From positions 310,001 to 374,000 of IMG/VR virus record IMGVR_UViG_3300036770_003657: a DNA stretch of 64,000 nt; one strand, 5' to 3'. A model generated the notes under the pieces. That model was not told where the DNA came from. It did no database searches and saw only the letters and a list, made by a program, of their open reading frames with translations. Both the position numbers and the translations under genes were made by a program. Shown in pieces: positions 1 to 56,870 of this stretch (position 1 is its first letter; the number at the start of each line of letters is the position of its first letter).

Positions 1-189
1 TCTATGATAGCCTATACTTATTCCTAACAAGGTTATACACACATACCCAATTATTGAATATAGGAACCACCATTCTGTAGTATTATTGGTGCCTATATTG
101 AAAATAGCCAAAGCTCCTATTACTTGCATAGGAACTATACTAGCCCATAAATTTTTGAGTTTAAAAAAATTTATAATTTTCTTTTCCAT
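1..189 (-). CDS. Fatty-acid (delta-9-type) desaturase, N-terminal part; runs off window start
   Basis: Hand translation from ATG at 189: MEKKIINFFKLKNLWASIVPMQVIGALAIF...YVCITLLGISIGYHR. Hydrophobic helices followed by G-x-x-x-GYHR, the start of the first His box of membrane desaturases. Not in ORF track. Confidence 0.65.
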   Translation of the reverse strand, partial: MEKKIINFFKLKNLWASIVPMQVIGALAIFNIGTNNTTEWWFLYSIIGYVCITLLGISIGYHR

Positions 190-728
190 TTTTTTAATAA
201 ACTATACTTCCCTTGATAAATTATTTTTTGCCAACAGGTATTATCTGTTTCGTTAGGGCAGGTCAAGTAAAAATACTTATCAGTTTTAAAATCAAGTCCA
301 TAAAAATTTAAATTCGATGATAACCACTCGTCCCAATTAAGTGTTTGTCTACTAATAAATGAAATTTTACTGTCAGTATTTTCTTTAAGCCACGTTAATT
401 GACTTTTTGCAGTTTCGGCTATAGATTGGCTCAGCCTTCTTGAAAACCTTATCTTCTCGTTGGGCTTCCAGGTTCTATTTAAGATTCTATAAAAGTCAGT
501 TGGCCAACAATCTCTATAAGATATACTTGAACATATTATTGGTGTTTCATTATCAAAGCAGATGGTTAGTGCTAGACAATATTTTAGGAAATCTTTATCG
601 TAATTTTTCCATAACCTGTGAGTTCTGTCATTAAATTGTATGATTCGTAATTCGTCAAACAAACTATCTAAGTAATTGTCTGCACCTGGGGACCATGTAA
701 CAGTATTCATTACGCTATTTTCATCCAA
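171..728 (-). CDS. Hypothetical phage protein (start may be at 710)
   Basis: 185-aa ORF packed between neighbours; no clear motif. Confidence 0.6.
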   Translation of the reverse strand: MDENSVMNTVTWSPGADNYLDSLFDELRIIQFNDRTHRLWKNYDKDFLKYCLALTICFDNETPIICSSISYRDCWPTDFYRILNRTWKPNEKIRFSRRLSQSIAETAKSQLTWLKENTDSKISFISRQTLNWDEWLSSNLNFYGLDFKTDKYFYLTCPNETDNTCWQKIIYQGKYSLLKKWKRKL

Positions 729-1150
729 TAAAATTTTTCTTTTCTTTTATCAAGCCATTCTAAATACCCATGCGGTTCTATTGATGATGGATCATCTACT
801 GATTCATGTATACTATACAATAGTTTTTTATACCCTTGTTTCCTTAAATAGTCACAAAAAGACGCAATTAATGATCTTGTTAAAGATCCATGCCTATACT
901 CTTTGATAACATATATCCATGTTGCTAATGGGATAGTATTTTGAAAAATATAATCCCATGTTATCATACCGCATATATTAGAATCTATCTCTGCAATTAA
1001 AATTCTTTTACCTTCTATGGCTTCTCTTAACCATATATCTATATCATGTGTATAGATTAGTGTGTTACATTTGCTTAATTCTTTAATAATAAAAGATTCG
1101 GATTGAGTAGGAAACCTTATTATAAGATCAGCTATGCTATTATTGTTCAT
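710..1150 (-). CDS. GNAT-family acetyltransferase-like protein
   Basis: ILIAEIDSNICGMI...WIYVIKEYRHGSLTRSL matches the GNAT motif A-like V-x-x-x-Y-R-x-x-G pattern. Confidence 0.6.
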   Translation of the reverse strand: MNNNSIADLIIRFPTQSESFIIKELSKCNTLIYTHDIDIWLREAIEGKRILIAEIDSNICGMITWDYIFQNTIPLATWIYVIKEYRHGSLTRSLIASFCDYLRKQGYKKLLYSIHESVDDPSSIEPHGYLEWLDKRKEKFYWMKIA

Positions 1151-1176
1151 AAATTTTCAATAAGAAAATATTAATT

Positions 1177-1761
1177 TTAAAAATGTTTGATATCGTCTAA
1201 TGACCATATGGATCCTGTAATAGAAATACGGGAATGTTTTAAATGATCTACATCATGCATAACTAATCCATTTAATAATACCCAAGTACATTTTTCGAAT
1301 TTTATAGAGCCAATATTGACCAAAGAATTATAATCATTAGCAACGTCACCATATTCTCTCAATATAGGTTTATCTTCTTCTTGATAAAAATTAGTAAATA
1401 TACCTTCACCACCTAAATCTAAAATGTAAAGAATAGTCCATCGTCTAGGTTCCTTATCACAATGTGCTAGTAATTTAGTTTTTTCAATTACAGGCTCAAT
1501 TTTTTGAATTCCTACTTGGTTAAAATTACATGGAATATTTTCTTCTATCCAAGTGCTAAGAGGAGAAAGTAAAGGCCACCTTTTATATAATGAATTTTTA
1601 TACTTAATATCTTTATAATGTCCAACTCTTAATCCTTTACCCTCATATTGCAGTTCATCATTATTATAGTTAGAAATATCTAACAATAAATTATCAGGTA
1701 TTTTTGGCCAATCTTTTAATATAGCCCATAAAATTACGTCGTTATATCGAATAGTGTTCAT
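1177..1761 (-). CDS. Putative Fe(II)/2OG-oxygenase-like (DSBH) protein
   Basis: HCD...HDV...R arrangement. Confidence 0.5.
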   Translation of the reverse strand: MNTIRYNDVILWAILKDWPKIPDNLLLDISNYNNDELQYEGKGLRVGHYKDIKYKNSLYKRWPLLSPLSTWIEENIPCNFNQVGIQKIEPVIEKTKLLAHCDKEPRRWTILYILDLGGEGIFTNFYQEEDKPILREYGDVANDYNSLVNIGSIKFEKCTWVLLNGLVMHDVDHLKHSRISITGSIWSLDDIKHF

Positions 1762-1781
1762 ATGTCCTTAATAAAAAATAT

Positions 1782-1854
1782 TGGAGCGGGTAGTCGGATT
1801 CGAACCGGCTTCATTAGCTTGGAAGGCTAAGTCCTCTCCCAGGAGAATACCCGC
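1782..1854 (-). tRNA. trnG: tRNA-Gly(TCC)
   Basis: Acceptor GCGGGTA/TACCCGC, anticodon arm TTAGC-CTTCCAA-GCTAA, GTTCGAATC T-loop, encoded CCA; atypical D-arm. Confidence 0.9.
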
Positions 1855-1856
1855 AT

Positions 1857-1978
1857 ACTTTATTAAAACACACTACCACCGAACTTTTTCACCTAGGGTT
1901 ATTAGTTTGTCTGCTAGGCAGAACATTGACTACGTACCGTCGGGCTTTGACTAGTCTTCAAGTGTGCTTTAATAAAGT
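1857..1978 (-). ncRNA. Long-stem hairpin RNA (family member 1)
   Basis: 18-bp terminal stem ACTTTATTAAAGCACACT/AGTGTGTTTTAATAAAGT with one G:U that only pairs on the minus strand; interior carries TGCCTAGCAGACAAA. Confidence 0.65.
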
Positions 1979-2295
1979 GTAGGCCACTAGTTCCCACTAG
2001 CCCCTACTTGAGTTGTTACCCTGTCCGTGCCTTTTTACCAAGAGGCAACCTCCACACATACTTTTACCCTACCGGATGAATGGCCCGGAGGGAGGTAGGT
2101 ATGTTCTCACCTAATATGGTTCACGCACATATAAGACGCCTACTCGCTAACCGGCGTAGGGCCGGGGATTCTGTTCAGGGACGCAAAGTTGCTGTCGTTT
2201 AAGAGTTAGCGTAGGCTTCGGGTCTCCGCTTGTCGTTAAGTCTAACTACTACTCTCCCTCTATTGTGTCGCCCAATCCTGGCGATCAATACTTAA
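1979..2295 (-). ncRNA. Unassigned structured non-coding RNA (~310 nt)
   Basis: GC-richer, ORF-free, several hairpins (TCGCC/GGCGA, CCTAC/GTAGG, CCGG/CCGG, TGCCT/AGGCA, CTAGT-GGGA-ACTAG); lies between a promoter and tRNA-Gly. Confidence 0.55.
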
Positions 2296-2308
2296 TTTTC
2301 TAATAATT

Positions 2309-2337
2309 ATTTTACAGTACTTCTAATAAAAAAGCAA
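2309..2337 (-). promoter_or_regulatory. sigma70-type promoter for ncRNA/tRNA-Gly unit
   Basis: TTGCTT-17 nt-TAAAAT, with TG immediately 5' of the -10 hexamer. Confidence 0.6.
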
Positions 2338-2425
2338 CTAATAATTTTATCATTTTCTAATTCTTTATGAGTAATTTCCATACCCTATTTATATTAGATA
2401 GATTTTAAAAAAAGAGTTAAATAGT

Positions 2426-2902
2426 TTGAAAATTATGAAATACTTGACGCATTTAGATTTTCCTTATGATAAAGAACAATTAATTTCCATTGCTGCTTTA
2501 GCTAAAGAATCAGCTACATATTACACTGACGATCGTTTTCCAAACTTAAATCTCACGTCTCATCTTATAAGTTACTATAACAACGAATATTTGGAGTCAT
2601 TAATAAGATCTTTAGATATTTCAGGCCAACCTAGATTTTATTATATGCAACCTTATAGTTTTTTTCCCACCCATACTGATAACCAAACGAAATGTTCAAT
2701 TAATATCATATTAAGCAATGACCCTGCACCAATAACTCTGTTAGGTAAAGACCTATATTATAAGTGCGCTATTATAGATACAACTAAACCGCATTCAGTG
2801 AGAAATAACTTTAGTGAACGTGTATTGTTTAAAATTAGCATTTTTGATAAATCTTATAAATCTATACTCAATCAACTTGAACTTAGGAAATTTATAAAAT
2901 AA
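2426..2902 (+). CDS. Putative Fe(II)/2OG-oxygenase-like protein
   Basis: PTHTD...KPHSV...RVLF motif set. Confidence 0.5.
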   Translation: MKIMKYLTHLDFPYDKEQLISIAALAKESATYYTDDRFPNLNLTSHLISYYNNEYLESLIRSLDISGQPRFYYMQPYSFFPTHTDNQTKCSINIILSNDPAPITLLGKDLYYKCAIIDTTKPHSVRNNFSERVLFKISIFDKSYKSILNQLELRKFIK

Positions 2903-3028
2903 AGAAAATTTTTATTGAATATATCTTTCTTTAGCTAATAAAGATCTTAGCAACCAACTATCCTTCACAACATTTAGTACATTCTCCACAACTTCTTCCT
3001 AAAGTTTCCACGATAATGGGAATAGTTT

Positions 3029-3469
3029 TCAATCTCTTAAATCTCCGACCAAATGTAATCTCCATTGATCAGATCCATTAATTGCAGTATGATCTAAAGT
3101 TGAATCTACTAAACATATATGCCCAATTGGAATATGTTCGACCAAACCATTTTTAAAAACGAAAAAGCACTGATCATTTGTAATCAAAGGAATTTGTATT
3201 CGTTTATAGAAATCTCTGTGTAAACTATAACAGGATTTAGGACCTAACCATAACAATCTAGTTCTAAATAAATTGTATTTTTTAATATATATTTCTATAG
3301 TTGTATTATCTATTATTGATTTTATAGTATGTTCATCATCTAATTGGAGATAAAATTGCTTACTTTGAGGTACAAAATCAATCCATTCAATCTTAGGCTC
3401 TATTTGATAATAATCCTTTAATAATCTTACGTGAGTTATTGTATCTATAGTATCTAATATATCAATCAT
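3029..3469 (-). CDS. Aspartyl/asparaginyl beta-hydroxylase-like oxygenase
   Basis: YSLHRD..RIQIPL...HTAING...RLHLV is typical of the family. Confidence 0.65.
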   Translation of the reverse strand: MIDILDTIDTITHVRLLKDYYQIEPKIEWIDFVPQSKQFYLQLDDEHTIKSIIDNTTIEIYIKKYNLFRTRLLWLGPKSCYSLHRDFYKRIQIPLITNDQCFFVFKNGLVEHIPIGHICLVDSTLDHTAINGSDQWRLHLVGDLRD

Positions 3470-4046
3470 TTTTTTTAGAATAGCACAAGTTTGATATTTT
3501 TTGAATCACTTCGTCAAATGTAGGATTGCCAATTAAACGTACACTAAGAATACATCTATAACTATTGTCTAATCTACTAGTAACATTATGGGGAATATCA
3601 ACTCTAGTTATTGTTGGATAGTTATCAATATATGCTCTATCAATAATACTTGGTTTATCTTTCCAGACTACTTTATAAAATTTTGTTCCCCCAGTAGTAG
3701 AAACTGGCAATTTATAATAACTACCATCTAGCCAGTACATATAGGTTTCAGCACACCCTTCTAGAGGGAAAATTATTGAAGTATGTATTGCTCGTTTTTC
3801 TATGTTATCATAATCGACATGACATACATCACTTTCGTAGAAAAAATTTTTTCTTTTAAAGCATAAAAAATTCCATCCTGGAGTTAATCCATAGCTATTC
3901 ATTTCTTCAGCAAAAACTTCTATCAGATCTTTTGAAATTGGTATGTTTTTGATATAGATGTCTTCTGTATCAAATTTACTCATAAAATCCAATGTTTGTT
4001 TTTTGAAATGATCGAAACATTTTAATTTAAAAGAATAATGTAACAT
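3462..4046 (-). CDS. Putative Fe(II)/2OG-oxygenase-like protein
   Basis: CHVD...IPHNV...R motif set. Confidence 0.5.
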   Translation of the reverse strand: MLHYSFKLKCFDHFKKQTLDFMSKFDTEDIYIKNIPISKDLIEVFAEEMNSYGLTPGWNFLCFKRKNFFYESDVCHVDYDNIEKRAIHTSIIFPLEGCAETYMYWLDGSYYKLPVSTTGGTKFYKVVWKDKPSIIDRAYIDNYPTITRVDIPHNVTSRLDNSYRCILSVRLIGNPTFDEVIQKISNLCYSKKND

Positions 4047-4084
4047 AAGTTTATTTATTTTCTGTAGTTAAAAATAAATATTTC

Positions 4085-5053
4085 ATGAAAAAGGTTTTAC
4101 TTTTAGTTCCAAGATTAGACGTTCTGTTTATTCCAAATAGTTATATTCCGTCAATAATAGGTCCTCCATTAGATAACGGAAAAAAATTATGGGGTGATTT
4201 CTTAAAATGTTTAGAGAAAGAGTATAAAACTAGATCTGATATAAAATTTTCTAAATTAGAACTTCCTATTTGGCAATTTAGTCCCAATATGTTAAAAGAT
4301 TACGACTATGATATGGTACTAGTTCCTCATAGTGCAGACTATAATTTTAAAGTAAAAAATAAACAAGTATACTATTATATGCAAACGACTTTTCCATGGA
4401 TATTCAGTGTAGATCCAAAGGGCTGGGCAGGAGGTGCTAGTGTATATCCATATAATAGCTTATATACTGATAAAATTGATAGTACAGTTTTTAATAATTT
4501 AAGAACTAGAGCGTTAGAAAACAAAAGTAAATTTGATCAACCTAAATATACTGATATATCTTTACCTGAAAATTTTGTATTGTTTACCTGTCAAATACCA
4601 ACAGATCAAAATGTAATGTATCATAGTAAAACAAGTGTAATTAATGCACTAATTTGGACCTGTAAAGCTACAGAAAAGATAAACATACCTTTAATAGTAA
4701 AAGGCCATTTATATAGAAAAGAAACAATGAACCATCTAAAACAAATTGTAAAAACTTATAAACATGCTATTTTTATGGAAGATGTAAGTATACATCAATT
4801 AATAAGTTTATCTAAATGTGTAGTTACAATAAATTCTGGAACTGGAATGGAAGCATTGTTGCATAAAAAACCAGTTATTACATTTGGCAAAGCTGAATAT
4901 GATTGTGTAACTAATCATGCAACAAAAGATAATATCATTGAAGTATTGAAAAATTTATCTTATAATGAAAACGACGTTATTAGATTTTTTGATACTTGGT
5001 ATAACTGGTGTTATGACGTAAATAATCCAGATTCTTTTTTCAAACTGCCCTAA
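4085..5053 (+). CDS. Capsular polysaccharide synthesis (KpsS/Capsule_synth-like) glycosyltransferase
   Basis: QIPTD..V, LIVKGH, VVTINSGTGMEALLHKKPVITFG..Y. Confidence 0.7.
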   Translation: MKKVLLLVPRLDVLFIPNSYIPSIIGPPLDNGKKLWGDFLKCLEKEYKTRSDIKFSKLELPIWQFSPNMLKDYDYDMVLVPHSADYNFKVKNKQVYYYMQTTFPWIFSVDPKGWAGGASVYPYNSLYTDKIDSTVFNNLRTRALENKSKFDQPKYTDISLPENFVLFTCQIPTDQNVMYHSKTSVINALIWTCKATEKINIPLIVKGHLYRKETMNHLKQIVKTYKHAIFMEDVSIHQLISLSKCVVTINSGTGMEALLHKKPVITFGKAEYDCVTNHATKDNIIEVLKNLSYNENDVIRFFDTWYNWCYDVNNPDSFFKLP

Positions 5054-5236
5054 GCCCAACGACCAAAATCACTTAAATATTTCGTTTTAACTTTTTTGAA
5101 AGAATATCCATTTCTTAAATTAACTTTGAAATCAAATTTAATATCATTAATTTTTTTAATTTTTTAATTGTGACAGAAATTGATCAAAATCTGTACAGAA
5201 TCTTGGTTCACCTGAGATTAGAAGCGCTACTTTCAT
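5051..5236 (-). pseudogene. Collapsed remnant of a glycosyltransferase-like gene
   Basis: MKVALLISGEPRFCTDF... stops after 26 codons; another frame gives ...KYLSDFGRWA*. Looks like N- and C-termini joined across a deletion. Confidence 0.4.
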
Positions 5237-5688
5237 TTTTCAAATTCCAAAATAGCCAAAGATCGAAATAATGGATCATTACTATAAATATTTAGTTCTC
5301 CATTTTGATCATATGCAACCAAGTGTTTACCTTGCTTTGCCTGCTCTTCGGCCCATTCGTATACATATTTTTTAATTATACCTGCTGTAACTATTCTGTA
5401 GTATAGATAAGTTTCTAATTTCTTGGTTATAATTATAGCATTACATTTATCAGGTTTAAGGTTTTCTGGTAAGGAACTATTTTCAATCCAATCACAATAA
5501 AAATTTTTACATAAGGTATCTCTTACTGGGTAAATTCCACATCCAACTCTGCCTAAAAACCTACAAGAACCATTAGTTGGACTTATTTCAAAATTAAAAA
5601 CTCTGGCAATTAACCAACCTTCGCAGCATTTACTACATCCGTTACAACTTCTTCCTTTGGTTTCAACATATATAGAAAATTGCTTCAA
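5233..5688 (-). CDS. YkgJ-like Cys-cluster (CxxCxxCC) Zn/Fe-binding protein
   Basis: RSCNGCSKCCEG...CRFL...CGIYPVR..LCKNFYC. Confidence 0.7.
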   Translation of the reverse strand: MKQFSIYVETKGRSCNGCSKCCEGWLIARVFNFEISPTNGSCRFLGRVGCGIYPVRDTLCKNFYCDWIENSSLPENLKPDKCNAIIITKKLETYLYYRIVTAGIIKKYVYEWAEEQAKQGKHLVAYDQNGELNIYSNDPLFRSLAILEFEK

Positions 5689-5909
5689 TCTTTAATATCT
5701 CCTACTAAATGTAATCTCCAATCATTAGAACCATTTATGGTAGTATGTTCTAAAGTAGAATCTATTAAGTATGAAAATCCTACAGATATATGTTCAAACG
5801 GTCCATCTTTAAAAATTATTCCATAGATGTCCCATTCAATTTTAGGTTCTAAAAGGTAATAATCATCTAGTAAAATAATATGATTAATTGATTTTAACTT
5901 TTTTATCAT
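5685..5909 (-). pseudogene. Internally deleted paralog of the 3029-3469 hydroxylase
   Basis: Shares DYY..EPKIEW and DSTL.HT.INGS..WRLHLVGD but lacks the central ~70 aa including HRD. Confidence 0.6.
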
Positions 5910-6580
5910 TTTTTTGAAACTATTGCACAAGTTTGAAAATTTATAGTAAACTTTGGGTTTTTAAATTCTATATGATAATGAGGAAATAAACTAGCTAGGT
6001 ACTTTTTGTTATAAAAGGCTAAAAACATTTTATTATCGATTGGCCTATCTCCTTTTTTATTATCTATCAAATATAGTTTATCATTTGATATAATAGGGTC
6101 ACATGTACCAAAATCTTTAATTCTTTTCCGATAAAAGAAATTAGTTACCTTACTATCTTCTATATCACAGAAACTAAAATATATTTTGTTTTTACAATAG
6201 TTGAATAAATCATCAATTCTATTTTTCATCTCATCTTCTGTGGTATGTGTAAAAACACTATATGCAATAATATTATCAAAGGATTTATTCAATGATAGTT
6301 TTAAATTTTTAATTCCTGTAGGATTATACATTGCATTGTAATCATCAAAATGAAAAAATTCTGCTTTAGGGTACAAATATCTAGCCTGTTCTATAGCTTC
6401 TTTTAAAACATCTATTCCTGTATAAAGACTAATATCATAATCAACCTCTCTTGTTTCTAGAAATGAGCCAATATTACACCCGTAATCTAGTAAAGTCCCT
6501 TGAATAATTTTTTCATCTATACACTTAAAGTAAGAAAAATTTTCTTTTTTATAATTTATAATCATTGTAATTTTACCCAT
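5906..6580 (-). CDS. Class I SAM-dependent methyltransferase
   Basis: LLDYGCNIG motif I, YTGIDV, AYSVFTH. Confidence 0.8.
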   Translation of the reverse strand: MGKITMIINYKKENFSYFKCIDEKIIQGTLLDYGCNIGSFLETREVDYDISLYTGIDVLKEAIEQARYLYPKAEFFHFDDYNAMYNPTGIKNLKLSLNKSFDNIIAYSVFTHTTEDEMKNRIDDLFNYCKNKIYFSFCDIEDSKVTNFFYRKRIKDFGTCDPIISNDKLYLIDNKKGDRPIDNKMFLAFYNKKYLASLFPHYHIEFKNPKFTINFQTCAIVSKK

Positions 6581-6664
6581 TCTTTAATTATTCTCAATCC
6601 TTCTGGATCATGCCATAGTGAATGCTTGTCACTATTTAATACTTTAAATTTAACAAGAGAAATG

Positions 6665-7096
6665 TCAAATTATATATTCGTAATTTATGGTATCTACGTT
6701 TTCACGAAATATATTAGCACCATTTCTTAGATGAAACTTACGGGCCATTTCAGTTTTTGGACTAAGGGTTACAAATCTAGTGACTGTAGGATATAATTTT
6801 GGAATTTCGTCAACTACAGCAAATAATAACTTACTGGCCGCACCCGCACGATAACTCCATATGGTATAAAATATGGCAGTGGTGAGGGTTGTGTCATCTC
6901 TACTTAGATCTTCTACAGTTTGTGGAACAAAATTGTGTAGACTAACGCATATCATAGCCTCTAATTTTTCTTCAACTAGAGCACCTACAAATCTATTACG
7001 ACTAACACGGAAATCTATAGGAATGTCTGGACGTACTGGGTCATCTTTGATATATTCTAACAAAGGGTTATCTGTGTCCTTTATGAGATTTAACAT
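6665..7096 (-). CDS. Conserved phage protein, GNAT-like fold possible
   Basis: IFYTIWSYRAGAASKLL...VTLSPKTEMARKFHLRNGA. Confidence 0.5.
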   Translation of the reverse strand: MLNLIKDTDNPLLEYIKDDPVRPDIPIDFRVSRNRFVGALVEEKLEAMICVSLHNFVPQTVEDLSRDDTTLTTAIFYTIWSYRAGAASKLLFAVVDEIPKLYPTVTRFVTLSPKTEMARKFHLRNGANIFRENVDTINYEYII

Positions 7097-7139
7097 ATAG
7101 CTACTTTATTATATACATATTTATATAATAAATATTTAC

Positions 7140-7838: not shown

Positions 7839-7913
7839 TGGTGCTGATAATAGGATTTGAACCTATGACTTCCATCTTACCAAGATGGCGATCTACCCCT
7901 GATCTATATCAGC
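7839..7913 (-). tRNA. trnT: tRNA-Thr(GGT)
   Basis: CCATC-TTGGTAA-GATGG, CCA. Confidence 0.92.
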
Positions 7914-7984
7914 AAGAAAGTTAGTTGTACAAAAGTATAGGTTTTGATCGAAACTTATCTAGTAAGTATACAAAAGGACTTACT

Positions 7985-8254
7985 ATGAGAGCACAAGACC
8001 TACTAAGAGATTATATAAACATTGTTGAAAAATGGGGCACGCCTACTACAGTCGCACCCAGCGAACGTGGCAAATATAAGGGCAAGAGTAAACAGGAACT
8101 ACAAAAAAGTTACAATTCTCTAAAAGCCAGTGGCCCACATAAAAAAGGATCAACAGAATATGGTCGTATGCGTGAACTAGCATTTGCCATACGTGCTAAA
8201 AGTGGATGGGGCAGTGTAAAGGGTGAAGGTAGTTATGAACAAGAGGAAGAATAA
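7985..8254 (+). CDS. Small basic phage protein (possible virion internal protein)
   Basis: SD AAAGGA before ATG 7985; MRAQDLLRDYINIVEKW... Confidence 0.6.
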   Translation: MRAQDLLRDYINIVEKWGTPTTVAPSERGKYKGKSKQELQKSYNSLKASGPHKKGSTEYGRMRELAFAIRAKSGWGSVKGEGSYEQEEE

Positions 8255-8257
8255 TTC

Positions 8258-8503
8258 TTGGATATAGAATTTATCTGCCTCTCAAAACTTGGTGTAGGAT
8301 CTGTTCTAGTAAGACATACGGATATTATTACTATGGAGCTTACTCCTATGGGATTCACTCGTATTGAATTTGGTTACGGTGAACATCTCATAGTGGAGGA
8401 AACACCTATTCAAATACTAAACAAGATTAGAGCAGCACAAGAACTCAGTGAGCAGTCTGTTGAATCAACAATTAAAGAACCTATTAATAAGGAGTCTAAA
8501 TAA
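8258..8503 (+). CDS. Small protein, FlbD-like fold possible
   Basis: DIITME.....TRIEF..GEHLIVEETPIQIL resembles the FlbD family pattern. Confidence 0.35.
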   Translation: MDIEFICLSKLGVGSVLVRHTDIITMELTPMGFTRIEFGYGEHLIVEETPIQILNKIRAAQELSEQSVESTIKEPINKESK

Positions 8504-12776: not shown

Positions 12777-12840
12777 TAACACACTCTAGCAGTTTATCTT
12801 TCTGCCCCATCTTACTAGGTAAGTGTGGACGAGTGTGTGT
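12777..12840 (-). ncRNA. Long-stem hairpin RNA (family member 4)
   Basis: ACACACTC/GAGTGTGT stem; inner GCAG-AAAGATAAA-CTGC and CTTAC-CTAG-TAAG. Confidence 0.5.
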
Positions 12841-12899
12841 AATAAAGCAGACTACTCATCGGCTCGCCGCCATTTGTCTGTTCGGCAATCTGCTTTATT
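12841..12899 (-). ncRNA. Long-stem hairpin RNA (family member 5)
   Basis: 11-bp stem AATAAAGCAGA/TCTGCTTTATT around the 39-nt repeated core. Confidence 0.75.
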
Positions 12900-12900
12900 A

Positions 12901-13018
12901 CTACTACCTTTTTACACATCCTAGTTACCGCCTAGGACTTATCATCCGGTAGTACGCCCTCGTTTGCCACATGTTTTAAGTGCATGGCAGGACCGCGTTC
13001 CCTATACACACTTTGCTA
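12901..13018 (-). ncRNA. Unassigned structured RNA directly after promoter P3
   Basis: Hairpins TGCCA..TGGCA (loop CACTTAAAA) and TCCTAG-GCGGTAA-CTAGGA. Confidence 0.45.
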
Positions 13019-13412: not shown

Positions 13413-13708
13413 CTATGTTTGAGCATCCAGAACAGAGCCTCACCTTTTTTCCAAAAACCAAAATACCATTCTTGCCTTGTGTCTCGTTGTAGGAAGAATG
13501 CTTCCACCTTACCGTTGGCTCTATGTACTTTGTTATTCATTTCTTCCCACCAATCTGTTTTGTGTAGGAAGTCTGCGTTGAAATATTCGTGTGTCTTAAT
13601 TACTAGAATATCGGCTGGAGGATTGTTAGCATAAAGATTCTTAAACCTTTCTGCTTCGTAGTAAGGTATATGACCTTCTAACCAATCCTGCCAAGCCAAT
13701 ATTTGCAT
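13409..13708 (-). CDS. Hypothetical protein
   Basis: 99-aa ORF in operon with rbr/DUF3501. Confidence 0.6.
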   Translation of the reverse strand: MQILAWQDWLEGHIPYYEAERFKNLYANNPPADILVIKTHEYFNADFLHKTDWWEEMNNKVHRANGKVEAFFLQRDTRQEWYFGFWKKGEALFWMLKHS

Positions 13709-31771: not shown

Positions 31772-33649
31772 TTAGGCTGCGTTTTTAACTTCTGTAAAAT
31801 CTACATCCGTAATGTCCTTATCCTGTTGTTGAGGCTGTGCGTTTTTAGCAGTGTAAATAACCTGTGCCGCAGCAGCTAGGTCACTCATCTTCTGTGTTAT
31901 TGATTCCTTAGTACCTGTAGCAATCTCAGTTAATAGTGCTGTGATACTAGTTTCAATCTTATCTTTATCATCACTGCTAATCTTATCCTCAACTTCCTTC
32001 AAATCCTTACGAATTTGATGGACTTGTCCGTCTACGCTATTCCTTAAATCAACAATCTCACGCTGTTTGCGATCTTCCTCAGCGTTGGCTTCAGCTTCAC
32101 GGATCATTTTTTCAATTTGATCCTTACTTAAACCACCATCTGATTTAATAGTGATCTTGTTTTCTTTGCCTGTAGTCTTATCCTTGGCACTAATTTTCAT
32201 AATACCATTAGCATCTACATCAAAGGTTACTTCAATTTGAGGCATACCTCTGGGCTGTGGCATAATACCTTCTAGGTTAAACTCGCCTAGTAGTTTATTA
32301 TCCTTTACAAACTCACGTTCACCTTGGAATACCTTAATAGTGACAGCAGGTTGATTGTCATCTGCTGTGCTAAATGTTTGACTAGCCTTTGTGGGAATAG
32401 TAGTATTCTTTTGAATGATCTTGGTCATTACTCCACCAAGTGTTTCAATACCAAGACTCAATGGTGTAACATCTAATAACAATACGTCATTGCGTTCGCC
32501 GCTTAGTACAGCACCTTGTACAGCAGCACCCACTGCCACTGCTTCATCTGGGTTAACATCCTTACGTGGCGCTTTACCAAATAACTTTTCTACAGCGTCC
32601 TGTACCTTGGGCATACGTGTCATACCACCAACTAAAATAATTTCATCAATATCTGCTGGTGTAACTCCTGCGTCTTTCATAGCAGTACGACAGGGAGCAA
32701 TGCTACGTTCAATTAAATCTTCAACCAATGCTTCTAATTTAGCACGAGTAAGTTTTAGATTCATATGTTTTGGCCCGCTAGCATCAGCAGTAACATATGG
32801 TAGATTAATATCTGTTTGTTGGCTGCTACTTAATTCAATTTTAGCCTTTTCCGCTGCCTCTTTAAGACGTTGTAGAGCTAATACATCTTTAGTCAAGTCA
32901 ATACCTTGATCCATCTTAAAAGTATCAACTAAGTAATCCATAATACGTTGGTCGAAGTCTTCACCACCTAAGAAAGTATCACCATTAGTGCTTAGTACTT
33001 CAATTTGTTTGTCATTACCCAAGTTAGCAATTTCAATAATGCTAATATCAAAAGTGCCACCGCCCAAGTCATATACTGCTACCTTACGATCTTTTTTATC
33101 CGTCTTATCAACGCCGTAAGCCAACGCGGCAGCAGTCGGTTCATTAATGATGCGAAGAACTTCCAAGCCAGCAATACGGCCAGCATCTTTAGTAGCTTGA
33201 CGCTGACTATCATTAAAATAGGCCGGAACAGTAATAACAGCTTGGGTAACATCATAACCTAAATAATCTTCAGCAGTCTTTTTCATTTTACGCAATACTT
33301 CTGCGCTGATTTGAGGAGGTGCTAACTCCTTGCCCTGTGCCTTAACCCAAGCATCACCACTTGAGTTTTCAATGATTTCATAGGGCATTAGATCTAAATC
33401 TTTTTGTACAGCCTCTTCTTTAAACTTACGTCCAATTAAGCGTTTGGCTGCGTATACTGTATTCTTTGGATTAGTAACAGCTTGTCTTTTAGCACTGGCA
33501 CCTACAAGAATTTCTTCATCTGTATAGGCTACTATACTGGGAGTAGTACGTGCTCCTTCGCTGTTTTCAATTACTTTGGGATTGCCGCCTTCTATAATGG
33601 CGACGCAACTGTTAGTAGTACCGAGATCGATACCGATTACCTTACTCAT
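31772..33649 (-). CDS. dnaK: Chaperone DnaK (Hsp70)
   Basis: [43 protein letters not shown]. Confidence 0.98.
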
Positions 33650-43617: not shown

Positions 43618-44502
43618 TTACCATGTAGTAGTATTTTTACCACTATCTCCTATTATTTGTCCAATACTATATGCAGCAGGAGCAGCTACAAATTCCACTG
43701 GATTATTATGATGTTGTGTTACCCAATCTCTTATTCTAGTCCAGTCTTGAAATAAGCTTTGTGTAGTTGTATATGTTCTTTTAGTACCTTTATTAGTCGT
43801 TAATTCGTAGCTATATGTAATTGTGTAAGTTAAATCATTGGTCCAATAATATATTTCAGATTCAGGTCTTGTTGGACATTCAGTTATATCATACTCTGTT
43901 AAAATTCTAGGAGTAGTGTGTGGAGCAGAGTCAGAAGTAGTAGCACTTGATAAATGATCAACATATTTCATTGTTCCAGTCGGTATCATATCATAAAATC
44001 CACTGGCTTCACAATTATCTGCATTGATAGTCAATGTAATATGATCTAAAAATCTTGGGCGTCTTGGCATACTAATATCAGTACATTGTACTTCAATAAT
44101 TTCTTCATCTTCTTCATCATTATACCATAAGTAAGGTATAGGATCATAATCTGGATTTGGTACTTCTCCTGCATAATTGCCATCACCATCATATGCAGCT
44201 ATAGTTTGGGGTAAAAAATGTGCTGGGTTAGGGATATGTGGTGGTTTTACTATTGATGCTCCAACTGTAAAACTAAAATTAGCATAAATTTCTACACTGC
44301 CTCCAGAACCAGACCAATTAAAAGTATTTCTATAGTCATAGCTATAACTAACACTGTCTCCAGGTTTATCATTACTAGAAGGAGTAAATGTTTCTGGAGC
44401 ACGCCACTCTGCTCCATTTTTAAATGGAAAAATAAATGGAAAATCTGTATTAGGTGGAGGAGGTGACTGTATCAGTGTATAGCCATCTATTATCACACTC
44501 AT
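43618..44502 (-). CDS. Hypothetical virion/baseplate protein
   Basis: Translationally coupled between the giant fibre and PAAR genes. Confidence 0.55.
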   Translation of the reverse strand: MSVIIDGYTLIQSPPPPNTDFPFIFPFKNGAEWRAPETFTPSSNDKPGDSVSYSYDYRNTFNWSGSGGSVEIYANFSFTVGASIVKPPHIPNPAHFLPQTIAAYDGDGNYAGEVPNPDYDPIPYLWYNDEEDEEIIEVQCTDISMPRRPRFLDHITLTINADNCEASGFYDMIPTGTMKYVDHLSSATTSDSAPHTTPRILTEYDITECPTRPESEIYYWTNDLTYTITYSYELTTNKGTKRTYTTTQSLFQDWTRIRDWVTQHHNNPVEFVAAPAAYSIGQIIGDSGKNTTTW

Positions 44503-47500
44503 TATAGTCTCCCTACAACTACTTCAATAACGCCTTCATCACCATCAAAATCTTCTAGTGCTTTACCTATTACCATACCCATACGTGGATCATCATGTGC
44601 CTTGGCATAGCCATCTCCTGCACTGACCAACATATCACCTTTGCTTATCTTACCACGTACCTTAACTGGTACACGACCTTGTAGAGCAACTGCTACAACG
44701 TGTTCACCTTCTAGTTCACTGTTCATTAAGTGTGCTGGGTTCTTACTAACTACACCTACTACTTTACGTGTTAAATCTGTACCTATGGTAACTTCATTTA
44801 CTCCACCAATCATTAGAACTGTGCCTTCTTCGTATTTTGCATCAGCAAGATAGTTCTCTGCCAAGTCAGCATATTTTGCTTGTGTAGCTACACCATTGAA
44901 TACAGAAGCATATAATGTATCAGTAGCAGGATTACAGTATATACCACCTGTTCCATAAACACTGTTACCGCTACCCCATAGCATTTGGTATGTAGAATTA
45001 CTATCGTTATTGTAATTGATAGTAACTTGCGAGGAAGTGGAAGCTGAAGCAGCATTACCTGTACAGCTTCCTGAACTTCCACTTACATTACCTGTTACAT
45101 TTCCTGTTAGATTACCAGAAAATGTGGCAGTTATAGTACCTGCACTGAAATTACCACTTGCATCACGTTTGACTAATGTACTTGCTGTATTTGCTGTAGC
45201 ACTTGATACATTAAAGGTAGTTCCACTTAATGAAAGATCGGTTCCGGCACTGTAAGTAGTATTAGTATCTGGATTAGCTGGCATAGTCAATGTTATTGAA
45301 CTAGTTCCTGTGATGTGTCCGTTTGCATCATAAGTAACACTAGGTATTTTAAATGTACCACCAAATGCCAGTGTTCTTGTTGCTCCTCCATCACTTATTG
45401 TACCAGCTGTTACTGAATTACTATGATTAAACGTAGTTCCACTTAGAGATAATCCAGTTCCAGCACTATAGGTAGTATTAGTATCTGGATTAGCTGGCAT
45501 AGTCAATGTAATAGTATTGGTACCAGTAATATGTCCATATGCATCATAAGTAACACTAGGTATTTTAAATGTACCACCAAATGCCAGTGTTCTTGTTGCT
45601 CCACCATCACTTACTGTACCAGCTGTTATTGCACTATTGGCATGCCCTAAAGTTATTGTACCTGCTGTACTTTGATTAGCAGTAAACGTACCGGTACCAG
45701 TTAATCCATTATTACCCTGTACAGTAAGTGTACCATTGCCTATACTGACTGTAGCTGTAGCTACACTAGCAGCAGTAACGTGACCATAACCATCAAACTC
45801 AAAACTAATATCTTGTATAAATGTATTATCACTGTTATCACTGCTTAAATTACCTACACTGCTAGTGTCAGCATGACTTAGTGTAATAGTACCTGCTGTA
45901 CTTTGATTAGCTGTAAATGTACCACTACCAGTTAATCCATTGTTACCCTGTACAGTAAGTGTACCGTTACCTATACTAACTGTGGCAGTAGCTACACTAG
46001 CACTAGTAACGTGTCCAAATCCATCAAAATCAAAACTAATATCTTGTATAAATGTATTACCACTATTATCACTGCTTAAATTACCTACACTGCTAGTGTC
46101 AGCATGAGAAATATTAACAGTGACACCTTCACCACTTCCTGAAATAGTTAACCCACTAGTTCCAGTTTGACTACCTGGAGTTCCAGAACTTACTGCTGCT
46201 ATATAATTACCAGTAGTATCAGTTCCTAGTGCTACACTATCAATTCCAATAGTTGTAGTCATGCTAACATTGTTAGATCCATCAAATGTCACACTACCAC
46301 TAACATCACCAGTTAAGGCAATAGTTCTGGCTGTAGCTAATTTTGTAGCAGTGTCAGCGTTCCCACTCAATCCACCACTTACACTACCTTGGAAAGTTCC
46401 TGCGATAACAGTTGACCCTGCTCCAAATGTCCATTTATCAACACTTTCATCCCATAATAAACTTACGTTGGTATCAGTACCTCTTTCTATTTCTATACCA
46501 GCATTTTGTGTTGGTTCAGCAGTTTCGTTACTATTCAGTACAATGATATTATCAGCTAACTCAATAGTTTCAGTATTGATTGTAGTAGTTGTGCCACTTA
46601 CTGTTAGATTACCACCAATAACAGTATTACCTGTAACGTTAAAGTTTCCACCAACATTAAGGTTTTCAGTTACCGCTACTCCACCAGTAACAATTAAAGT
46701 ACCAGTTGACGTATTTGTACTGGATATATTACCTGCCATTTCAATACGGCCAGTCCCAAATACCTTAAACTTATCTGCACTGGCTAAATTAGTAGGTCCA
46801 CCATAAGTAAAGGCTATGTAGCTGGTAGTATCAGTTACCGTAATAACCTTATCTATAGCCCAATGACTCTTTAGGTTATTATCCTTTACAAACGCACTAC
46901 CATTCCAATTTAAATTAGTTAACCAACTAAATCTATTGGTTGTTCCTACACTAGTAAATCTAGTTTTAAAATCTGTAGTATAAGCACTTTGTAAAGTAAC
47001 ACTAGTTAATGCCCCACTGCCATTGTAGGTAATATTAAAAGTTGGATCATCTATAGTAGGTGCTGCTTTATAAATCACCTGTCCACCAGTAGTAAAGTTA
47101 ATAGTGCTACCATCAGTGGCTTGGAACGTCATGGTGTTACTTGCTGTTAATGTCTTAGCATTAGCCAATGTAAATGTACCTGTGCTGTTGGAAATAGTCA
47201 TTCCATTTACAGTCTTATTGGTCAATGCTTCTGTACCTGCCAATGTAGCCAATGTACCTGTCGTTGGGAAGGTTACACTGGTTGCAGCAGTCATAGTAAA
47301 TGTGCTGGCATATGCTCCTGATGTAGTTAAGTTACCTCCTAAGGTTATAGTCTTTGTACCATTGTTAACACCAGTGCCACCATATGTTGGGCTAATTATG
47401 CTGGCTTGCCAAGTACCTGTACTAATAGTGCCTACTCCAGTTAGACTACTATTGACAACACCTGAACCTAATGTTGTACTACTCAATACATCTACACCGT

Positions 47501-50500
47501 TGATCTTATAAGTTTTACCTGTGGCAAGATCCATGTTCTCACTACTGGTCCAGCTACTTGTAGATTGTATCCAACGGAAAAGTTTATCAGTGGTGCCTTT
47601 TATTGTTATACCACCTCCAGCTGCTGTAGCATCAGTAATTCCACCAGTGTTGAAAACTACAGCCACTCCATTTGGACTAATTTGATCTGGTGGTGTATCA
47701 GCTGTAAACGTAAACAAATTAGCACCATTAATAGCAGTTACTCTTGGATTGGCACCTAATTGACCACCACTTACTCTACTCAATGTCATCCCAGGAATCA
47801 TTCCTGCTGTACTAGCAGTAATTGTAGTTGTCAGTGCTCCAATAGCGGTAAAGTTAATATTGCCACTACGACTTGATATTGGTTCTACTGAGCCTAATTC
47901 AATATTGTTATCATCCATTTGGATGTCATATGCATTAAGAGTGCTGGCAGCACCGGTAATATTAACATTACCATTTACAGTGAGCCCGTTTAAGGTTATG
48001 CTGTCGGTCCAAACTGGACGTTTATTAGCACTGCCTAAACTCACTGGCTGAACATTTAACACAGAATTAGTATCACCTATAGGTAATTTTTGTATTATGG
48101 TGGAGCCACTGGCATATAACATGTCCCCGACAGTATAACTGGCAATATTAGTACCACCCTTATCTACAGGAACTTGACCAATAATATTACTTGGTGTTAG
48201 ATAATATAATCCATCTTGTCCATCTAGAGTACCTGCATCTACTACACCTGATTTAATACCAACAGCACCCTGACTACCTCCGGTACCTACTTCAAATTGA
48301 CTCTTATTAAATGACGCTACACCTAAGTTTGTATGGCCAGGGATATTTGCATTTTCCTGTCCTCCACTGACTACATCCACACCAACAGTAACTTCATTGT
48401 AGAATTCTTGTATGCCTCCAGGTCCTGGATCAAAGAATGGGCCAGTTATAGTAATAGCACTATCAACACTTGGTTTTTTGATCTTTTGTACGGCCTTGGC
48501 CCATGTACTATCGCCTCTTAAAAAGGTGTTACTATTAGCAGTACCAATAGCTAATCTAGTAGTGCTCATTATACCACTAACAATATTAGTTGTATCTATA
48601 TTACTGGCGCTTAGACTACTCCAGTTTTCTGCCAGTATACTAGCATTATCTACAACACCAATAATTTTAATGCTTTGCTTTCTAAAACTAGCAACCCCAG
48701 TACCAGTATTAGTAAAATTAAATGCACCAATAGTAAGACCTAATGTACTGGCCACTGCATCAGCTCTACCTTCATGTATAGTAAAGGTGTTAGTAGTCAC
48801 ACTTCCTACAAAGAATATGCTGTTAGTTAGTATACCGTATGGTGGATCTGCTGCAATAATTTTTACTGCATCACCAGTAGCAAATCCATGATCTGGAATA
48901 TAAACTGTATCTTTGGTGATATCTAATATAGATAATGTTAAAGTTTGATTACCTGCACCAGAGTTAACAATTGTTAACTTGGTTGATAGACTATAAGTTG
49001 TATAAAGTTCAATAGTATCAGCATCAATACTTTTCACATAATAGATGCTATTATTAACAATCCCACCTAATGGTGTTCCAAATCCTGCATTATATTGTAC
49101 AGCATCACCATCATCAAATGGGTGACCAACGATAGTTATACGACTTAGCGCAGTATTAACATTGCCTCCTGAACCTGTACTAGCAGCATTAAATGTAGCA
49201 ACTACAGTACTGTCTAATTGATCAGTTGTTTTCGTTACAACATTTGCATCTTCTGTAAATTCTGGGGCTATACTATTTGCATTAAACTTCAATGCGCCAA
49301 CAATATCAACATACACACGATTTTGTATTTGGCTAACCTTAACACTAAATGCGCTTCCACCTGTACGTCCATTCAAATTTGCATCATTTGCACTGAGTCT
49401 ATCTACTGTGGTATACCCACTTCCACCGGCAGTTAGTACTACATTAGTAACGACTCCACCACTTAGGAACAGGTCTGCCCTAGCTCCAGTTCCTGATCCT
49501 CCTGTTAAAGGCACATCAGTATAAAATCCTGAAGGTGGTTGAGTATATCCACTACCCCCTGCTAATCCTGTTACTGGATCATTGCTATTATCTAGTGCAT
49601 TAGCAACACCTTCTACAATATATTCTATAGTGCCTTGTGCTTGACTATTACTACCTGTTACACTAGTTACTCCTGTAAAATCATAAGTTTGAGTTGGGTC
49701 TAATAGTAATATCTGTTTACTATCTAATTCACTTAAAATGTAATTGGTATTTTGATCTGGAATAATACCTCCTACTAGGGTAGGTGTTAATCCAGTGCTT
49801 GCACCATTAAGAGTTATTTCTCCTACAGTATCAAATGTATCGTCAAAAAATTCACCTAAACTTCCAATGACTACAGTAGTAGAATTATTGCCACCGACTA
49901 CTCGACCAGTTGCTCCAGAACTGGCTTGTAGGATTAAGTCACCATCAACGGCCACTAATACACCATCTAGAGTCAACGATACTCCACTATATGTTTCAAT
50001 GGCTAAATCACCATTTAAAATACTAGTAGGAGGTACTGTATTGACCAAGTTTAGTCTACTACGATATCCATTACTTCTATATACTAAGAAGTTTCTTAAT
50101 GGTGGTATCTGATCAGCACTTAATTTTCCTAGTGCATTTAACTGAGGGATACCACCTGGTTGAGTAGTAGTTGTAAGTTCTTTGTCAATAAAGTCTCCTA
50201 GTCTATTTTCTAAGAAACTTCTAACAGCCAACTGTGTGCTTAATCTATTATGACTTGGTCCGCCTACTTCATTATCACCGAGATCAATATCAGCACTAAA
50301 TTCTTCAATAGTAATATTACCAACAGCCAACTTCAACGCATCTAAAGCAGCAATACTAACAGTGTTTGTAAATTGTACATTACCTGTTTTGTTTTCAGCT
50401 TTAATAAAATCACCAACTTTAAAGTCACCAAGTTCATTGGTTCCTGAACTATATACACGCCCTGGTAATTCACTGACTTGTTCATATTCAACTCTAGTAC

Positions 50501-56786: not shown

Positions 56787-56870
56787 TATTGTCTCCAACT
56801 GTAGTTTGGAGATAGCCTCCAAACCGCCCATAATAGTATTTATTAGGAACGATTTGGATAGTAAACTAGT

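What the first reader, a model, noticed from the sequence alone, without database searches (positions are those of the whole stretch)
1857..2337. Promoter-driven ~430-nt structured non-coding region upstream of an isolated tRNA-Gly
Seen: ORF-free, GC-richer than its flanks, with many hairpins, its own sigma70-like promoter, and a long-stem family element at its 3' end. Established: large ncRNAs such as GOLLD and ROOL occur beside phage tRNAs. Whether this is one of them, or new, cannot be told by eye.
Basis: partly seen in the sequence, partly recalled or inferred. Interest (0 to 1): 0.6.

Follow-up and report, generated by a model that had tools for sequence, protein, structure and literature searches.

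The report
Pseudoknotted phage RNA beside tRNA genes
The GC-rich, gene-free gap upstream of a huge phage's tRNA-Gly gene holds three conserved structured-RNA modules; the central one, about 195 nt and multiply pseudoknotted, belongs to a family with over 100 copies in uncultivated phages, almost always inside tRNA gene arrays, that matches no catalogued RNA family and has no known function.

Summary
Window 1857-2290 is ORF-free and 45-52% GC against 20-32% flanks. It lies on the minus strand directly upstream of tRNA-Gly(UCC). It is not GOLLD, ROOL, RNase P, tmRNA, SRP or any other Rfam 15 family, even at E<=10.

It is also not one 430-nt RNA. It is three modules that occur independently elsewhere:
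- a 5' module (about 2171-2290);
- a 196-nt core (1975-2170);
- a 120-nt long-stem module (1857-1978), which is a presence/absence indel in metagenome variants.

The core is a full-length member (69 bits, E 1e-18) of a family I defined from IMG/VR contigs: about 130 hits, 87 distinct among the first 101. Of those 87, 77 have a same-strand tRNA within 300 nt, and compact copies fill inter-tRNA gaps of 197-213 nt.

Covariation supports tandem H-type pseudoknots, an invariant 3' motif, and pairing of the 5' tail with the loop of the terminal hairpin. I found no member in GenBank phages or among the prokaryotic genome loci that carry the motif pattern. The claimed promoter is no better than chance.

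Most likely this is a compact, stable RNA excised from tRNA-array transcripts by tRNA-processing enzymes and acting in trans. Its target is unknown, and expression could not be tested.

The parts
1782..1854 (-). tRNA-Gly (anticodon UCC), with CCA encoded just downstream. It is the last unit of the transcript.
   Evidence: ARAGORN; Rfam tRNA 37.9 bits.
1857..1978 (-). Long-stem module, about 120 nt. An 18-bp closing stem (arms 1961-1978 and 1857-1874) encloses about 86 nt. Probably a double-strand-specific (RNase III-type) processing stalk or a small separate RNA.
   Evidence: - Inverted repeat I1, 94% complementary. Its single imperfection is a G.U pair in the minus-sense RNA but an A.C mismatch in the plus sense, read directly from the sequence.
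- Full-length homologues lie between tRNA-Ile and tRNA-Ala in L110 and L103.
- The family with a conserved stem and a variable interior gave 132 distinct arm pairs, counted on both strands of a palindromic stem, several per array.
- Contigs in runs X2 and X3 join 1856 directly to 1976/1977.
1975..2170 (-). Core RNA, a member of the new family of pseudoknotted RNAs found in tRNA arrays.
- 5' tail: 2164-2170.
- Four tandem pseudoknot units: about 2022-2165.
- Hairpin G: 2067-2092.
   Evidence: - Covariance model R1 matches full length: 69 bits, E 1.3e-18. It is the only copy in the 399,796-bp genome.
- Covariation is shown.
2009..2026 (-). Invariant 18-nt motif (GGACAGGGUAACAACUCA). It includes a 4-bp mini-hairpin, GGGU / ACUC, with a 4-5-nt loop.
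   Evidence: - Invariant columns in 45 seed sequences.
- 100% paired in 87 distinct sequences, with only one-sided changes.
- Loop length varies between 4 and 5 nt while the stem is kept.
1979..2008 (-). Terminal hairpin T. The outer and inner stems covary, and the internal loop is invariant (GGGC opposite GURGC). The apical loop GGGA (within 1990-1997) pairs with UCCC of the 5' tail (within 2164-2170).
   Evidence: - Helix 11 is 91-92% paired, with 8-9 pairs changed on both sides.
- Tail-loop complementarity covaries across subfamilies, p = 2.5e-8.
2171..2290 (-). 5' module, about 120 nt. It includes a covarying hairpin (2268-2284) with a conserved AGGAUUG loop and an invariant 21-nt block. 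It is a separate conserved element, not part of the core.
   Evidence: - Homologues precede cores in L146, L159, L280 and L277.
- It stands alone after tRNA-Met in L278, and a short form follows protein genes in L279, L281 and L282.
- The consensus fold has 4 pairs with compensatory changes in only 4 sequences, so the structure is tentative.
2309..2337 (-). Unsupported.
   Evidence: Read. The scan did not list it, and it found 3 sites against 4.2 expected. The region is about 20% GC.

Best explanation
The region encodes, on the minus strand and co-oriented with tRNA-Gly(UCC), three juxtaposed structured-RNA modules rather than one large RNA.

The central 196 nt (1975-2170) belongs to a previously uncatalogued family of ~200-nt RNAs that huge, mostly freshwater phages carry inside their tRNA gene arrays.

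Shown:
- family membership;
- the tRNA-array context;
- a fold of consecutive H-type pseudoknots, two of them strongly supported on both stems and two more weakly;
- an invariant 18-nt motif with a mini-hairpin;
- a terminal hairpin whose loop pairs with the RNA's own 5' tail, so the molecule is closed on itself.

Inferred:
- The array is transcribed as one precursor.
- The RNA is cut out by the machinery that matures the flanking tRNAs: RNase P at the 5' end of the next tRNA, and 3'-end processing of the previous tRNA.
- Where no tRNA flanks it, as on the window's 3' side, the long conserved stem supplies a double-strand-specific cut.
- The released compact, pseudoknot-rich RNA is nuclease-resistant and acts in trans.
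- Its invariant motif and invariant internal loop present a fixed surface to a conserved partner, most plausibly a component of translation or tRNA metabolism.

The partner and the effect are not known.
For: Identity of the region:
- GC island without ORFs.
- No Rfam family at E<=10 in the window, and none over seven compact homologues.

Family:
- Model R1 found 101 + 30 + 1 hits, 87 distinct among the first 101. The window scored 69 bits, E 1.3e-18, full length.

Context:
- 77 of 87 distinct members have a same-strand tRNA within 300 nt, and only 1 has only an opposite-strand tRNA. The median is 11 tRNAs per locus.
- In 15 compact cases the whole inter-tRNA gap is 197-230 nt.
- The element starts right after the encoded CCA.

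Structure:
- 82.9% of cells are paired against 60.5% in shuffles. The covariation score is 0.481 against 0.148 (0/500 shuffles reach it), and slid controls stay at or below 0.10.
- Helices C and E were not in the model, yet are 82% and 94% paired with GC/CG and CG/GU/AU/GC alternation.
- Tail-loop pairing covaries: CCUC/GAGG, CCCC/GGGG, UCCC/GGGA, UUUCC/GGAAA.

Conservation beyond flanks:
- In four unrelated freshwater metagenome runs, contigs cover only 1781-2301, at about 97-99% identity, and then run on into unlike sequence.

Strand:
- The model hit and the tRNA are both on the minus strand.
- The G.U pair in the long stem exists only in the minus sense.
Against: - No expression data. No RNA run holds the sequence, so transcript ends, strand and stability are untested.
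- Single-sequence folding energy is not significant.
- Stems A and I of pseudoknots I and IV have only modest support: 55% and 48% paired in alignments, with script tests at p = 0.002 and 3e-5.
- No protein family recurs next to the RNA. The best is a metallophosphoesterase-like protein in 37 of 122 loci.
- Always lying in cis within arrays fits a purely cis-acting role equally well.
- The loci are partly redundant populations, so the counts overstate the number of independent events.
Confidence: 0.6

Rival explanations
1. Cis-acting spacer. The pseudoknotted unit is not a trans-acting RNA. It is a structural insulator within the tRNA array that blocks exonucleases, guides folding or ordered processing of neighbouring tRNAs, or sets their stoichiometry.
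For: - It is always in cis inside same-strand arrays, flush with tRNA ends.
- Tandem pseudoknots are classic exonuclease blocks (general knowledge).
- No partner protein gene was found.
Against: - An 18-nt motif and an internal loop that are invariant across subfamilies whose stems have diverged completely point to a specific recognition surface, more than a roadblock needs.
- There are only 1-2 copies per array of 10-27 tRNAs, not one per tRNA.
Confidence: 0.15
2. Ribozyme. The compact pseudoknotted fold is catalytic. It either self-cleaves at one of its boundaries to help mature the adjacent tRNAs, or is a phage substitute for an RNA-processing ribozyme.
For: - Its boundaries coincide with tRNA 3' (CCA) and 5' ends.
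- The fold is closed and multiply pseudoknotted, with a few invariant nucleotides.
- HDV-like ribozymes flanking phage tRNAs are known (own knowledge).
Against: - No match to any Rfam ribozyme or RNase P model at permissive thresholds.
- The topology is a string of simple H-type pseudoknots, not the nested double pseudoknot of HDV (parse).
- RNase P-like resemblances are limited to 5-nt words and lack P1-P3/P15 equivalents.
- Host enzymes already explain the processing.
Confidence: 0.1
3. One ~430-nt promoter-driven large RNA of the GOLLD/ROOL type spans 1857-2337.
For: - Contiguous GC-rich block.
- X6 and X4 contigs carry most of the block together, at about 97-99% identity.
- It is next to a phage tRNA, as GOLLD and ROOL are (own knowledge; PMC12286853 was listed).
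Against: - No GOLLD or ROOL hit at E<=10.
- The three modules occur independently.
- Natural variants lack 1857-1975 or 2174-2251.
- Most family members are ~200 nt between two tRNAs.
- The promoter is at chance level.
Confidence: 0.05
4. A divergent tmRNA-like RNA for ribosome rescue. It has a string of pseudoknots and a tag-like stretch in the 5' module (NDSNFA when translated).
For: - Tandem H-type pseudoknots resemble PK2-PK4 of tmRNA (own knowledge).
- Related viral contigs do carry real permuted tmRNAs with the tag ANDERFALAA.
- A tag-like codon run lies at about 2185-2205.
Against: - ARAGORN and the Rfam tmRNA models are negative.
- There is no acceptor/T-arm domain and no G.U alanine identity pair in any terminal helix.
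- The tag-like frame has no conserved stop and no terminal Ala-Ala (read).
- Most members lack the 5' module altogether.
- No SmpB gene in the genome.
- The same peptide word occurs in a protein-coding frame (possibly a tail-fibre gene, not checked).
Confidence: 0.03
5. Not a functional RNA. The block is decayed tRNA genes, a captured host fragment or a coding remnant.
For: GC content like that of tRNA clusters.
Against: - Compensatory changes in most helices.
- Full-length conservation in more than 80 distinct sequences.
- Flanks diverge while the block is kept at about 97-99% identity.
- No true full-length member among the 61 loci from 185,579 species genomes that carry the motif pattern.
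Confidence: 0.01

Closest known systems
GOLLD and ROOL large ornate RNAs
   Same: Phage- or prophage-borne structured non-coding RNAs of unknown function that tend to lie next to tRNA genes. They are rich in pseudoknots, and GOLLD was first seen in lake metagenomes (own knowledge; PMC12286853).
   Different: - They are 580-800 nt, against ~200 nt here.
- Rfam models give no hit even at E<=10.
- The architecture here is a linear string of H-type pseudoknots closed by a tail-loop pairing.
- Whether this RNA oligomerises is untested.
tmRNA (including permuted forms on related viral contigs)
   Same: A series of abutting H-type pseudoknots. The genes sit among or beside tRNAs, and phage-encoded examples exist.
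   Different: No tRNA-like domain, no tag reading frame with a stop, no SmpB gene, and no model hit.
Stable RNAs C and D (species 1 and 2) of the phage T4 tRNA cluster
   Same: Small stable RNAs of unknown function that are co-transcribed with phage tRNAs and released by tRNA-processing enzymes (own knowledge). This is the closest analogue for the mechanism proposed here.
   Different: No sequence or structure comparison could be made with these tools. Those RNAs are 120-140 nt and, as far as I know, have not been described as multiply pseudoknotted.
Upstream pseudoknot domain plus tRNA-like structure of tobamovirus 3' UTRs
   Same: Tandem H-type pseudoknots directly 5' of a tRNA-shaped element. 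They are known to bind a translation factor (own knowledge).
   Different: That is a 3' UTR of a eukaryotic plus-strand RNA virus, not a discrete gene in a DNA phage. The analogy is in shape only.
HDV-like (theta) ribozymes next to phage tRNAs
   Same: A structured RNA flush with the end of a phage tRNA gene (own knowledge).
   Different: The nested double-pseudoknot topology is not seen here, and no Rfam ribozyme hit was found.

Membership tests
New family (pseudoknotted RNA of phage tRNA arrays, model R1) | Full-length match to the covariance model built from 45 seed sequences | tested here: met
   Window 1975-2170 (-): 69 bits, E 1.3e-18, model positions 1-204 of 204. The same hit came from the genome search.
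New family (pseudoknotted RNA of phage tRNA arrays, model R1) | Invariant 18-nt motif followed by the terminal hairpin with the GGGC / GURGC internal loop | tested here: met
   Present at 2009-2026 and 1979-2008.
New family (pseudoknotted RNA of phage tRNA arrays, model R1) | Same-strand tRNA context | tested here: met
   tRNA-Gly lies 120 nt downstream on the same strand. In variants without the long stem it is directly adjacent.
New family (pseudoknotted RNA of phage tRNA arrays, model R1) | 5' tail complementary to the apical loop of the terminal hairpin | tested here: met
   UCCC / GGGA in the window.
GOLLD / ROOL | Match to the Rfam covariance model | tested here: not met
   No hit at E<=10 over 1500-2700, both strands. 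None at gathering score over the window.
Bacterial RNase P RNA | Match to the Rfam models; P4 pseudoknot formed by CR-I and CR-V; P1-P3 and P15 | tested here: not met
   No model hit. Only 5-nt word resemblances were seen. The 5' end abuts a tRNA, so no P1-P3 can exist.
tmRNA | tRNA-like domain with CCA end, tag ORF with stop, detection by ARAGORN or Rfam, SmpB partner | tested here: not met
   ARAGORN found none in the window. No Rfam hit. No SmpB in the genome, while the control rang in 10 of 14 well-known genomes.
SRP RNA / 6S / Y RNA | Match to the Rfam models; for Y RNA, a Ro60 (TROVE) partner gene | tested here: not met
   No hits. No TROVE gene.
Group I intron | Rfam model match; P3-P8-P7 core with room for P8 between the R-like and S-like elements; an interrupted host gene | tested here: not met
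   No hit. An R/S-like word pair on the plus strand is only 24 nt apart, and no exon context exists (read).
Self-cleaving ribozymes (HDV-like, glmS, twister, hatchet, pistol, hammerhead) | Rfam model match; catalytic activity | tested here: inconclusive
   No model hit. Activity cannot be tested with these tools.

The most novel reading that the evidence does not exclude
The core is the founding member of a new class of phage RNA. It is a ~200-nt ring of tandem pseudoknots, closed by a tail-loop pairing, that is produced from tRNA-array transcripts. It either targets a universally conserved piece of the host translation or tRNA machinery, for example as a decoy against tRNA-directed defence nucleases or as a modulator of the ribosome or a tRNA enzyme. 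Or, if the tail-loop pairing forms between molecules, it assembles head-to-tail into RNA-only oligomers in the manner of ROOL and GOLLD.
Probability: 0.3. Interest if true: 0.85.

Novelty: categorically new. Interest (0 to 1): 0.66.

Why it matters
Huge phages carry large tRNA arrays whose roles, in translation take-over and in escape from tRNA-cleaving defences, are under active study.

A widespread, highly constrained RNA embedded in those arrays is a missing part of that picture. It matches none of the 4227 Rfam families, no GenBank phage record and no paper text.

Its fold is unusual and testable: a string of pseudoknots closed on itself, with an invariant 18-nt motif. It is a compact target for structure determination.

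It would also add a third example, after GOLLD and ROOL, to the unexplained link between ornate RNAs and phage tRNAs.

Caveat: a 2023 catalogue of 10,006 unnamed candidate structured RNAs from IMG/VR (PMC10690425) may list it without characterisation. I could not check its supplements.

Tried and rejected
- **Rfam and ARAGORN.** Rfam was run at gathering score on the whole window, at E<=10 on 1500-2700, and at E<=1 on seven loci with compact homologues. Only tRNAs were found. ARAGORN found no tmRNA.
- **BLAST against 50,697 GenBank phage records.** The whole region matched only tRNA-Gly. The conserved 3' domain at E<=10 gave only chance hits inside protein genes.
- **Synteny through flanking proteins.** The 194-aa neighbour has no relatives. 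The 158-aa neighbour's loci lack the element. Homologues were finally reached through DnaK-bearing contigs.
- **Partner genes.** No SmpB or Ro60 gene. No neighbouring protein family occurs in more than 30% of loci.
- **Resemblances by eye, rejected:**
  - A group I R/S-like pair on the plus strand (spacing too short, no exons).
  - RNase P CR-I/CR-V words (5 nt only).
  - The 16S rRNA 3' end (GUAACAA and GUAGGGG). The second word is conserved only in the window's own subfamily.
  - The tag-like NDSNFA run (no conserved stop; the same word occurs in a protein-coding frame).
- **Other searches.**
  - A pattern scan of 596 Gb of prokaryotic genomes gave 61 hits, which is at or below chance. None was a true full-length member.
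  - The sequencing-run search found no RNA run, so expression is untested.
  - mafft-qinsi was unavailable.
  - An iterated sequence-only HMM for the long-stem module found only 3 members. The family is defined by its stem, not its interior.

The large protein searches were not used.

Full report
**Setting.**
- The window is bases 310001-374000 of a 399,796-bp IMG/VR virus record that CheckV estimates as complete.
- The genome is 36.6% GC and has 27 tRNA genes and ORFs of 4,100-6,700 codons, so it is a huge phage.
- The window encodes a DnaK homologue, ribonucleotide reductase and 21 tRNAs, all on the minus strand.
- The finding lies in a locally AT-rich stretch (about 28% GC) of small accessory genes.

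**The observation.**
- Between the minus-strand ORF 1177-1761 plus tRNA-Gly(UCC) (1782-1854) and the plus-strand ORF starting near 2435, there is no ORF over 57 aa.
- GC rises to 0.45-0.52 in 1801-2300 and falls to 0.20 by 2301-2500.
- An 18-bp inverted repeat joins 1857-1874 to 1961-1978.
- Folding energies of either strand are not significantly below shuffled controls.

**Known families.**
- Rfam 15 (4227 models) gives only tRNAs at gathering score over the window.
- Nothing overlaps 1857-2340 at E<=10.
- ARAGORN finds no tmRNA.
- GenBank phages match only through the tRNA.

**Finding relatives.**
- Flanking proteins were of no use.
- Contigs reached through DnaK gave three short matches to window 1978-2035. 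Each lay inside a same-strand tRNA array.
- In 101 non-redundant contexts the motif sits in tRNA arrays. In compact cases the whole gap between two tRNAs is 197-230 nt. The recurrent unit is therefore a ~200-nt RNA, not a 430-nt one.
- Seven such loci also gave no Rfam hit over the element at E<=1.

**Structure.**
A 45-sequence alignment (A1) could be parsed by hand into these elements:
- Four consecutive H-type pseudoknots: stems A/B, C/D, E/F (with an inserted hairpin G) and H/I.
- An invariant 18-nt stretch containing a 4-bp mini-hairpin.
- A terminal hairpin T with an invariant internal loop.

On A1 the covariation score is 0.338 against 0.136 in shuffles (0 of 500 reach it) and at most 0.12 when partners are slid.

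A covariance model used only stems B, D, F, G, H, the mini-hairpin and T (R1). It found 101 hits in the first 100 sources, 30 more in the remaining viral loci, and one more later.

On the model-based alignment of 87 distinct sequences:
- 82.9% of cells pair, against 60.5% in shuffles.
- The covariation score is 0.481 against 0.148, and at most 0.10 for slid partners.
- Stems C and E were not in the model, yet are 82% and 94% paired with alternating pair types. Pseudoknots II and III are therefore supported on both stems.
- Stems A and I align poorly (55% and 48%). Per-sequence tests still show more complementarity than with segments taken from other members (p = 0.002 and 3e-5).

A further long-range pairing joins the 5' tail, directly after the upstream tRNA's CCA, to the apical loop of hairpin T. 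Matched pairs change together across subfamilies: CCUC/GAGG, CCCC/GGGG, UCCC/GGGA, UUUCC/GGAAA and AACU/AGUU (p = 2.5e-8). The RNA is thus closed on itself. Alternatively, the same pairing could link molecules head to tail.

**The window's copy.**
- R1 matches 1975-2170 on the minus strand over the full model (69 bits, E 1.3e-18).
- It is the only copy in the genome. Several related contigs carry two divergent copies.
- All helices can be placed on the window sequence.

**The other two modules.**
- *Long-stem module (1857-1978).*
  - It has full-length homologues between tRNA-Ile and tRNA-Ala in two other contigs.
  - It belongs to a family with a conserved ~12-18-bp stem and a variable interior of roughly 40-110 nt (spans mostly 62-136 nt). 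There are several copies per tRNA array.
  - Its one imperfect pair is G.U in the tRNA sense and A.C in the antisense. This argues for an RNA-level structure on the minus strand.
  - In related loci the stem often abuts the 5' end of a core, taking the place of a tRNA.
- *5' module (about 2171-2290).*
  - It precedes cores in four loci, and there it directly follows a tRNA.
  - It stands alone after tRNA-Met in another locus.
  - A short form follows protein genes in three more loci.
  - Its structure is only tentatively supported.

**Natural variants.**
- No RNA run holds the sequence.
- Contigs from four freshwater metagenome runs match only 1781-2301 and then continue into unlike sequence. 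One 585-nt contig covers 1867-2301 with 12 differences. Another covers 1848-2173 with 4 differences.
- Two runs carry a form that joins 1856 directly to 1976/1977. One carries a form that skips 2174-2251.
- The RNA block is therefore far better conserved than the neighbouring genes, and its outer modules are optional.

**Distribution.**
- Of 87 distinct members, 77 have a same-strand tRNA within 300 nt, and one has only an opposite-strand tRNA. Most of the others sit at contig ends. The loci hold a median of 11 tRNAs.
- The same pattern in 596 Gb of prokaryotic species genomes gave 61 hits, about what chance predicts. None is a full-length member.
- GenBank phages lack it.
- The motif sequence occurs in no searchable paper.
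- A 2023 catalogue of unnamed IMG/VR candidates could contain it.

**Function.**
Nothing here shows what the RNA does.
- The position, flush between tRNAs that encode their own CCA, makes excision by tRNA-maturing enzymes the simplest route to a discrete RNA.
- The conserved long stems would supply cuts where no tRNA flanks it.
- The closed pseudoknotted fold predicts stability.
- The motif stays invariant while every stem diverges. This predicts a fixed, conserved partner.
They are weighed in their own sections.
- I found no partner gene.

**Verdict.**
This is a real and previously uncatalogued RNA family of unknown function.

Noticed in passing
L103, L108, L110, L121, L146, L190 and many other loci; window 1857-1978: A family of long-stem elements populates the tRNA arrays of these phages. 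The stem is conserved (AUAUUGAAGCAC paired with GUGUUUCAAUAU) and the interior varies over roughly 40-110 nt. There are up to four copies per locus, and they often take the slot of a tRNA. The conserved G.U pair is present only in the tRNA sense.
   Followed up: partly
L278 about 2470-2600 (-); L279 about 13560-13700; L281 about 1450-1600; L282 about 2840-2980: The 5' module, with its invariant 21-nt block GCGGAGACCCGAAGCCUACGC, also occurs without the core. It lies after tRNA-Met in L278, and a shorter form lies just after protein-coding genes in L279, L281 and L282. It may be a separate small RNA or a 3' UTR element.
   Followed up: partly
L281 3215-3602 (+); L282 4614-5024 (+): Two viral contigs that share the 5' module block carry a permuted (two-piece) tmRNA of betaproteobacterial type, with tag ANDERFALAA. 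It scores 113-124 bits on the two Rfam tmRNA models in L281. This is a possible host clue for this phage group, or it may be captured host DNA.
   Followed up: partly
L107, L120, L121, L126, L138, L173, L180, L182, L190, L193, L194, L201: Many related contigs encode two copies of the core RNA from different subfamilies, for example 180 bits and 60 bits on the same contig. These look like paralogues rather than recent duplicates. The window's genome has one copy.
   Followed up: no
window 1-7100: The RNA sits in an AT-rich island (about 28% GC against 36.6% for the genome). The island holds small accessory genes: GNAT acetyltransferase, Asp/Arg hydroxylase-like, capsule-synthesis-like and methyltransferase. 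Two 194-aa ORFs (1177-1761 and 3462-4046) have no Pfam family.
   Followed up: no
window 7900-8400 and 12800-13000: Further GC-enriched stretches (0.39-0.48) with only short ORFs lie next to the other tRNA clusters. Model R1 and Rfam found nothing there. They were not examined further.
   Followed up: no
window 31772-33649 (-), 44502-56831 (-): There is a phage DnaK/Hsp70 homologue, 66% identical to bacterial DnaK and 91% identical to those of related viral contigs. There is also a 4109-codon ORF. Elsewhere the genome has ORFs of 4800, 6000 and 6682 codons.
   Followed up: no
loci L096-L214, flanks of the arrays: The most recurrent neighbours of the arrays are a metallophosphoesterase-like protein (37 of 122 loci), an unannotated 219-aa protein (27 loci), an RNaseH-like PF04308 protein (25 loci) and a dual-specificity-phosphatase-like protein (25 loci). 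None is consistent enough to be called a partner.
   Followed up: partly
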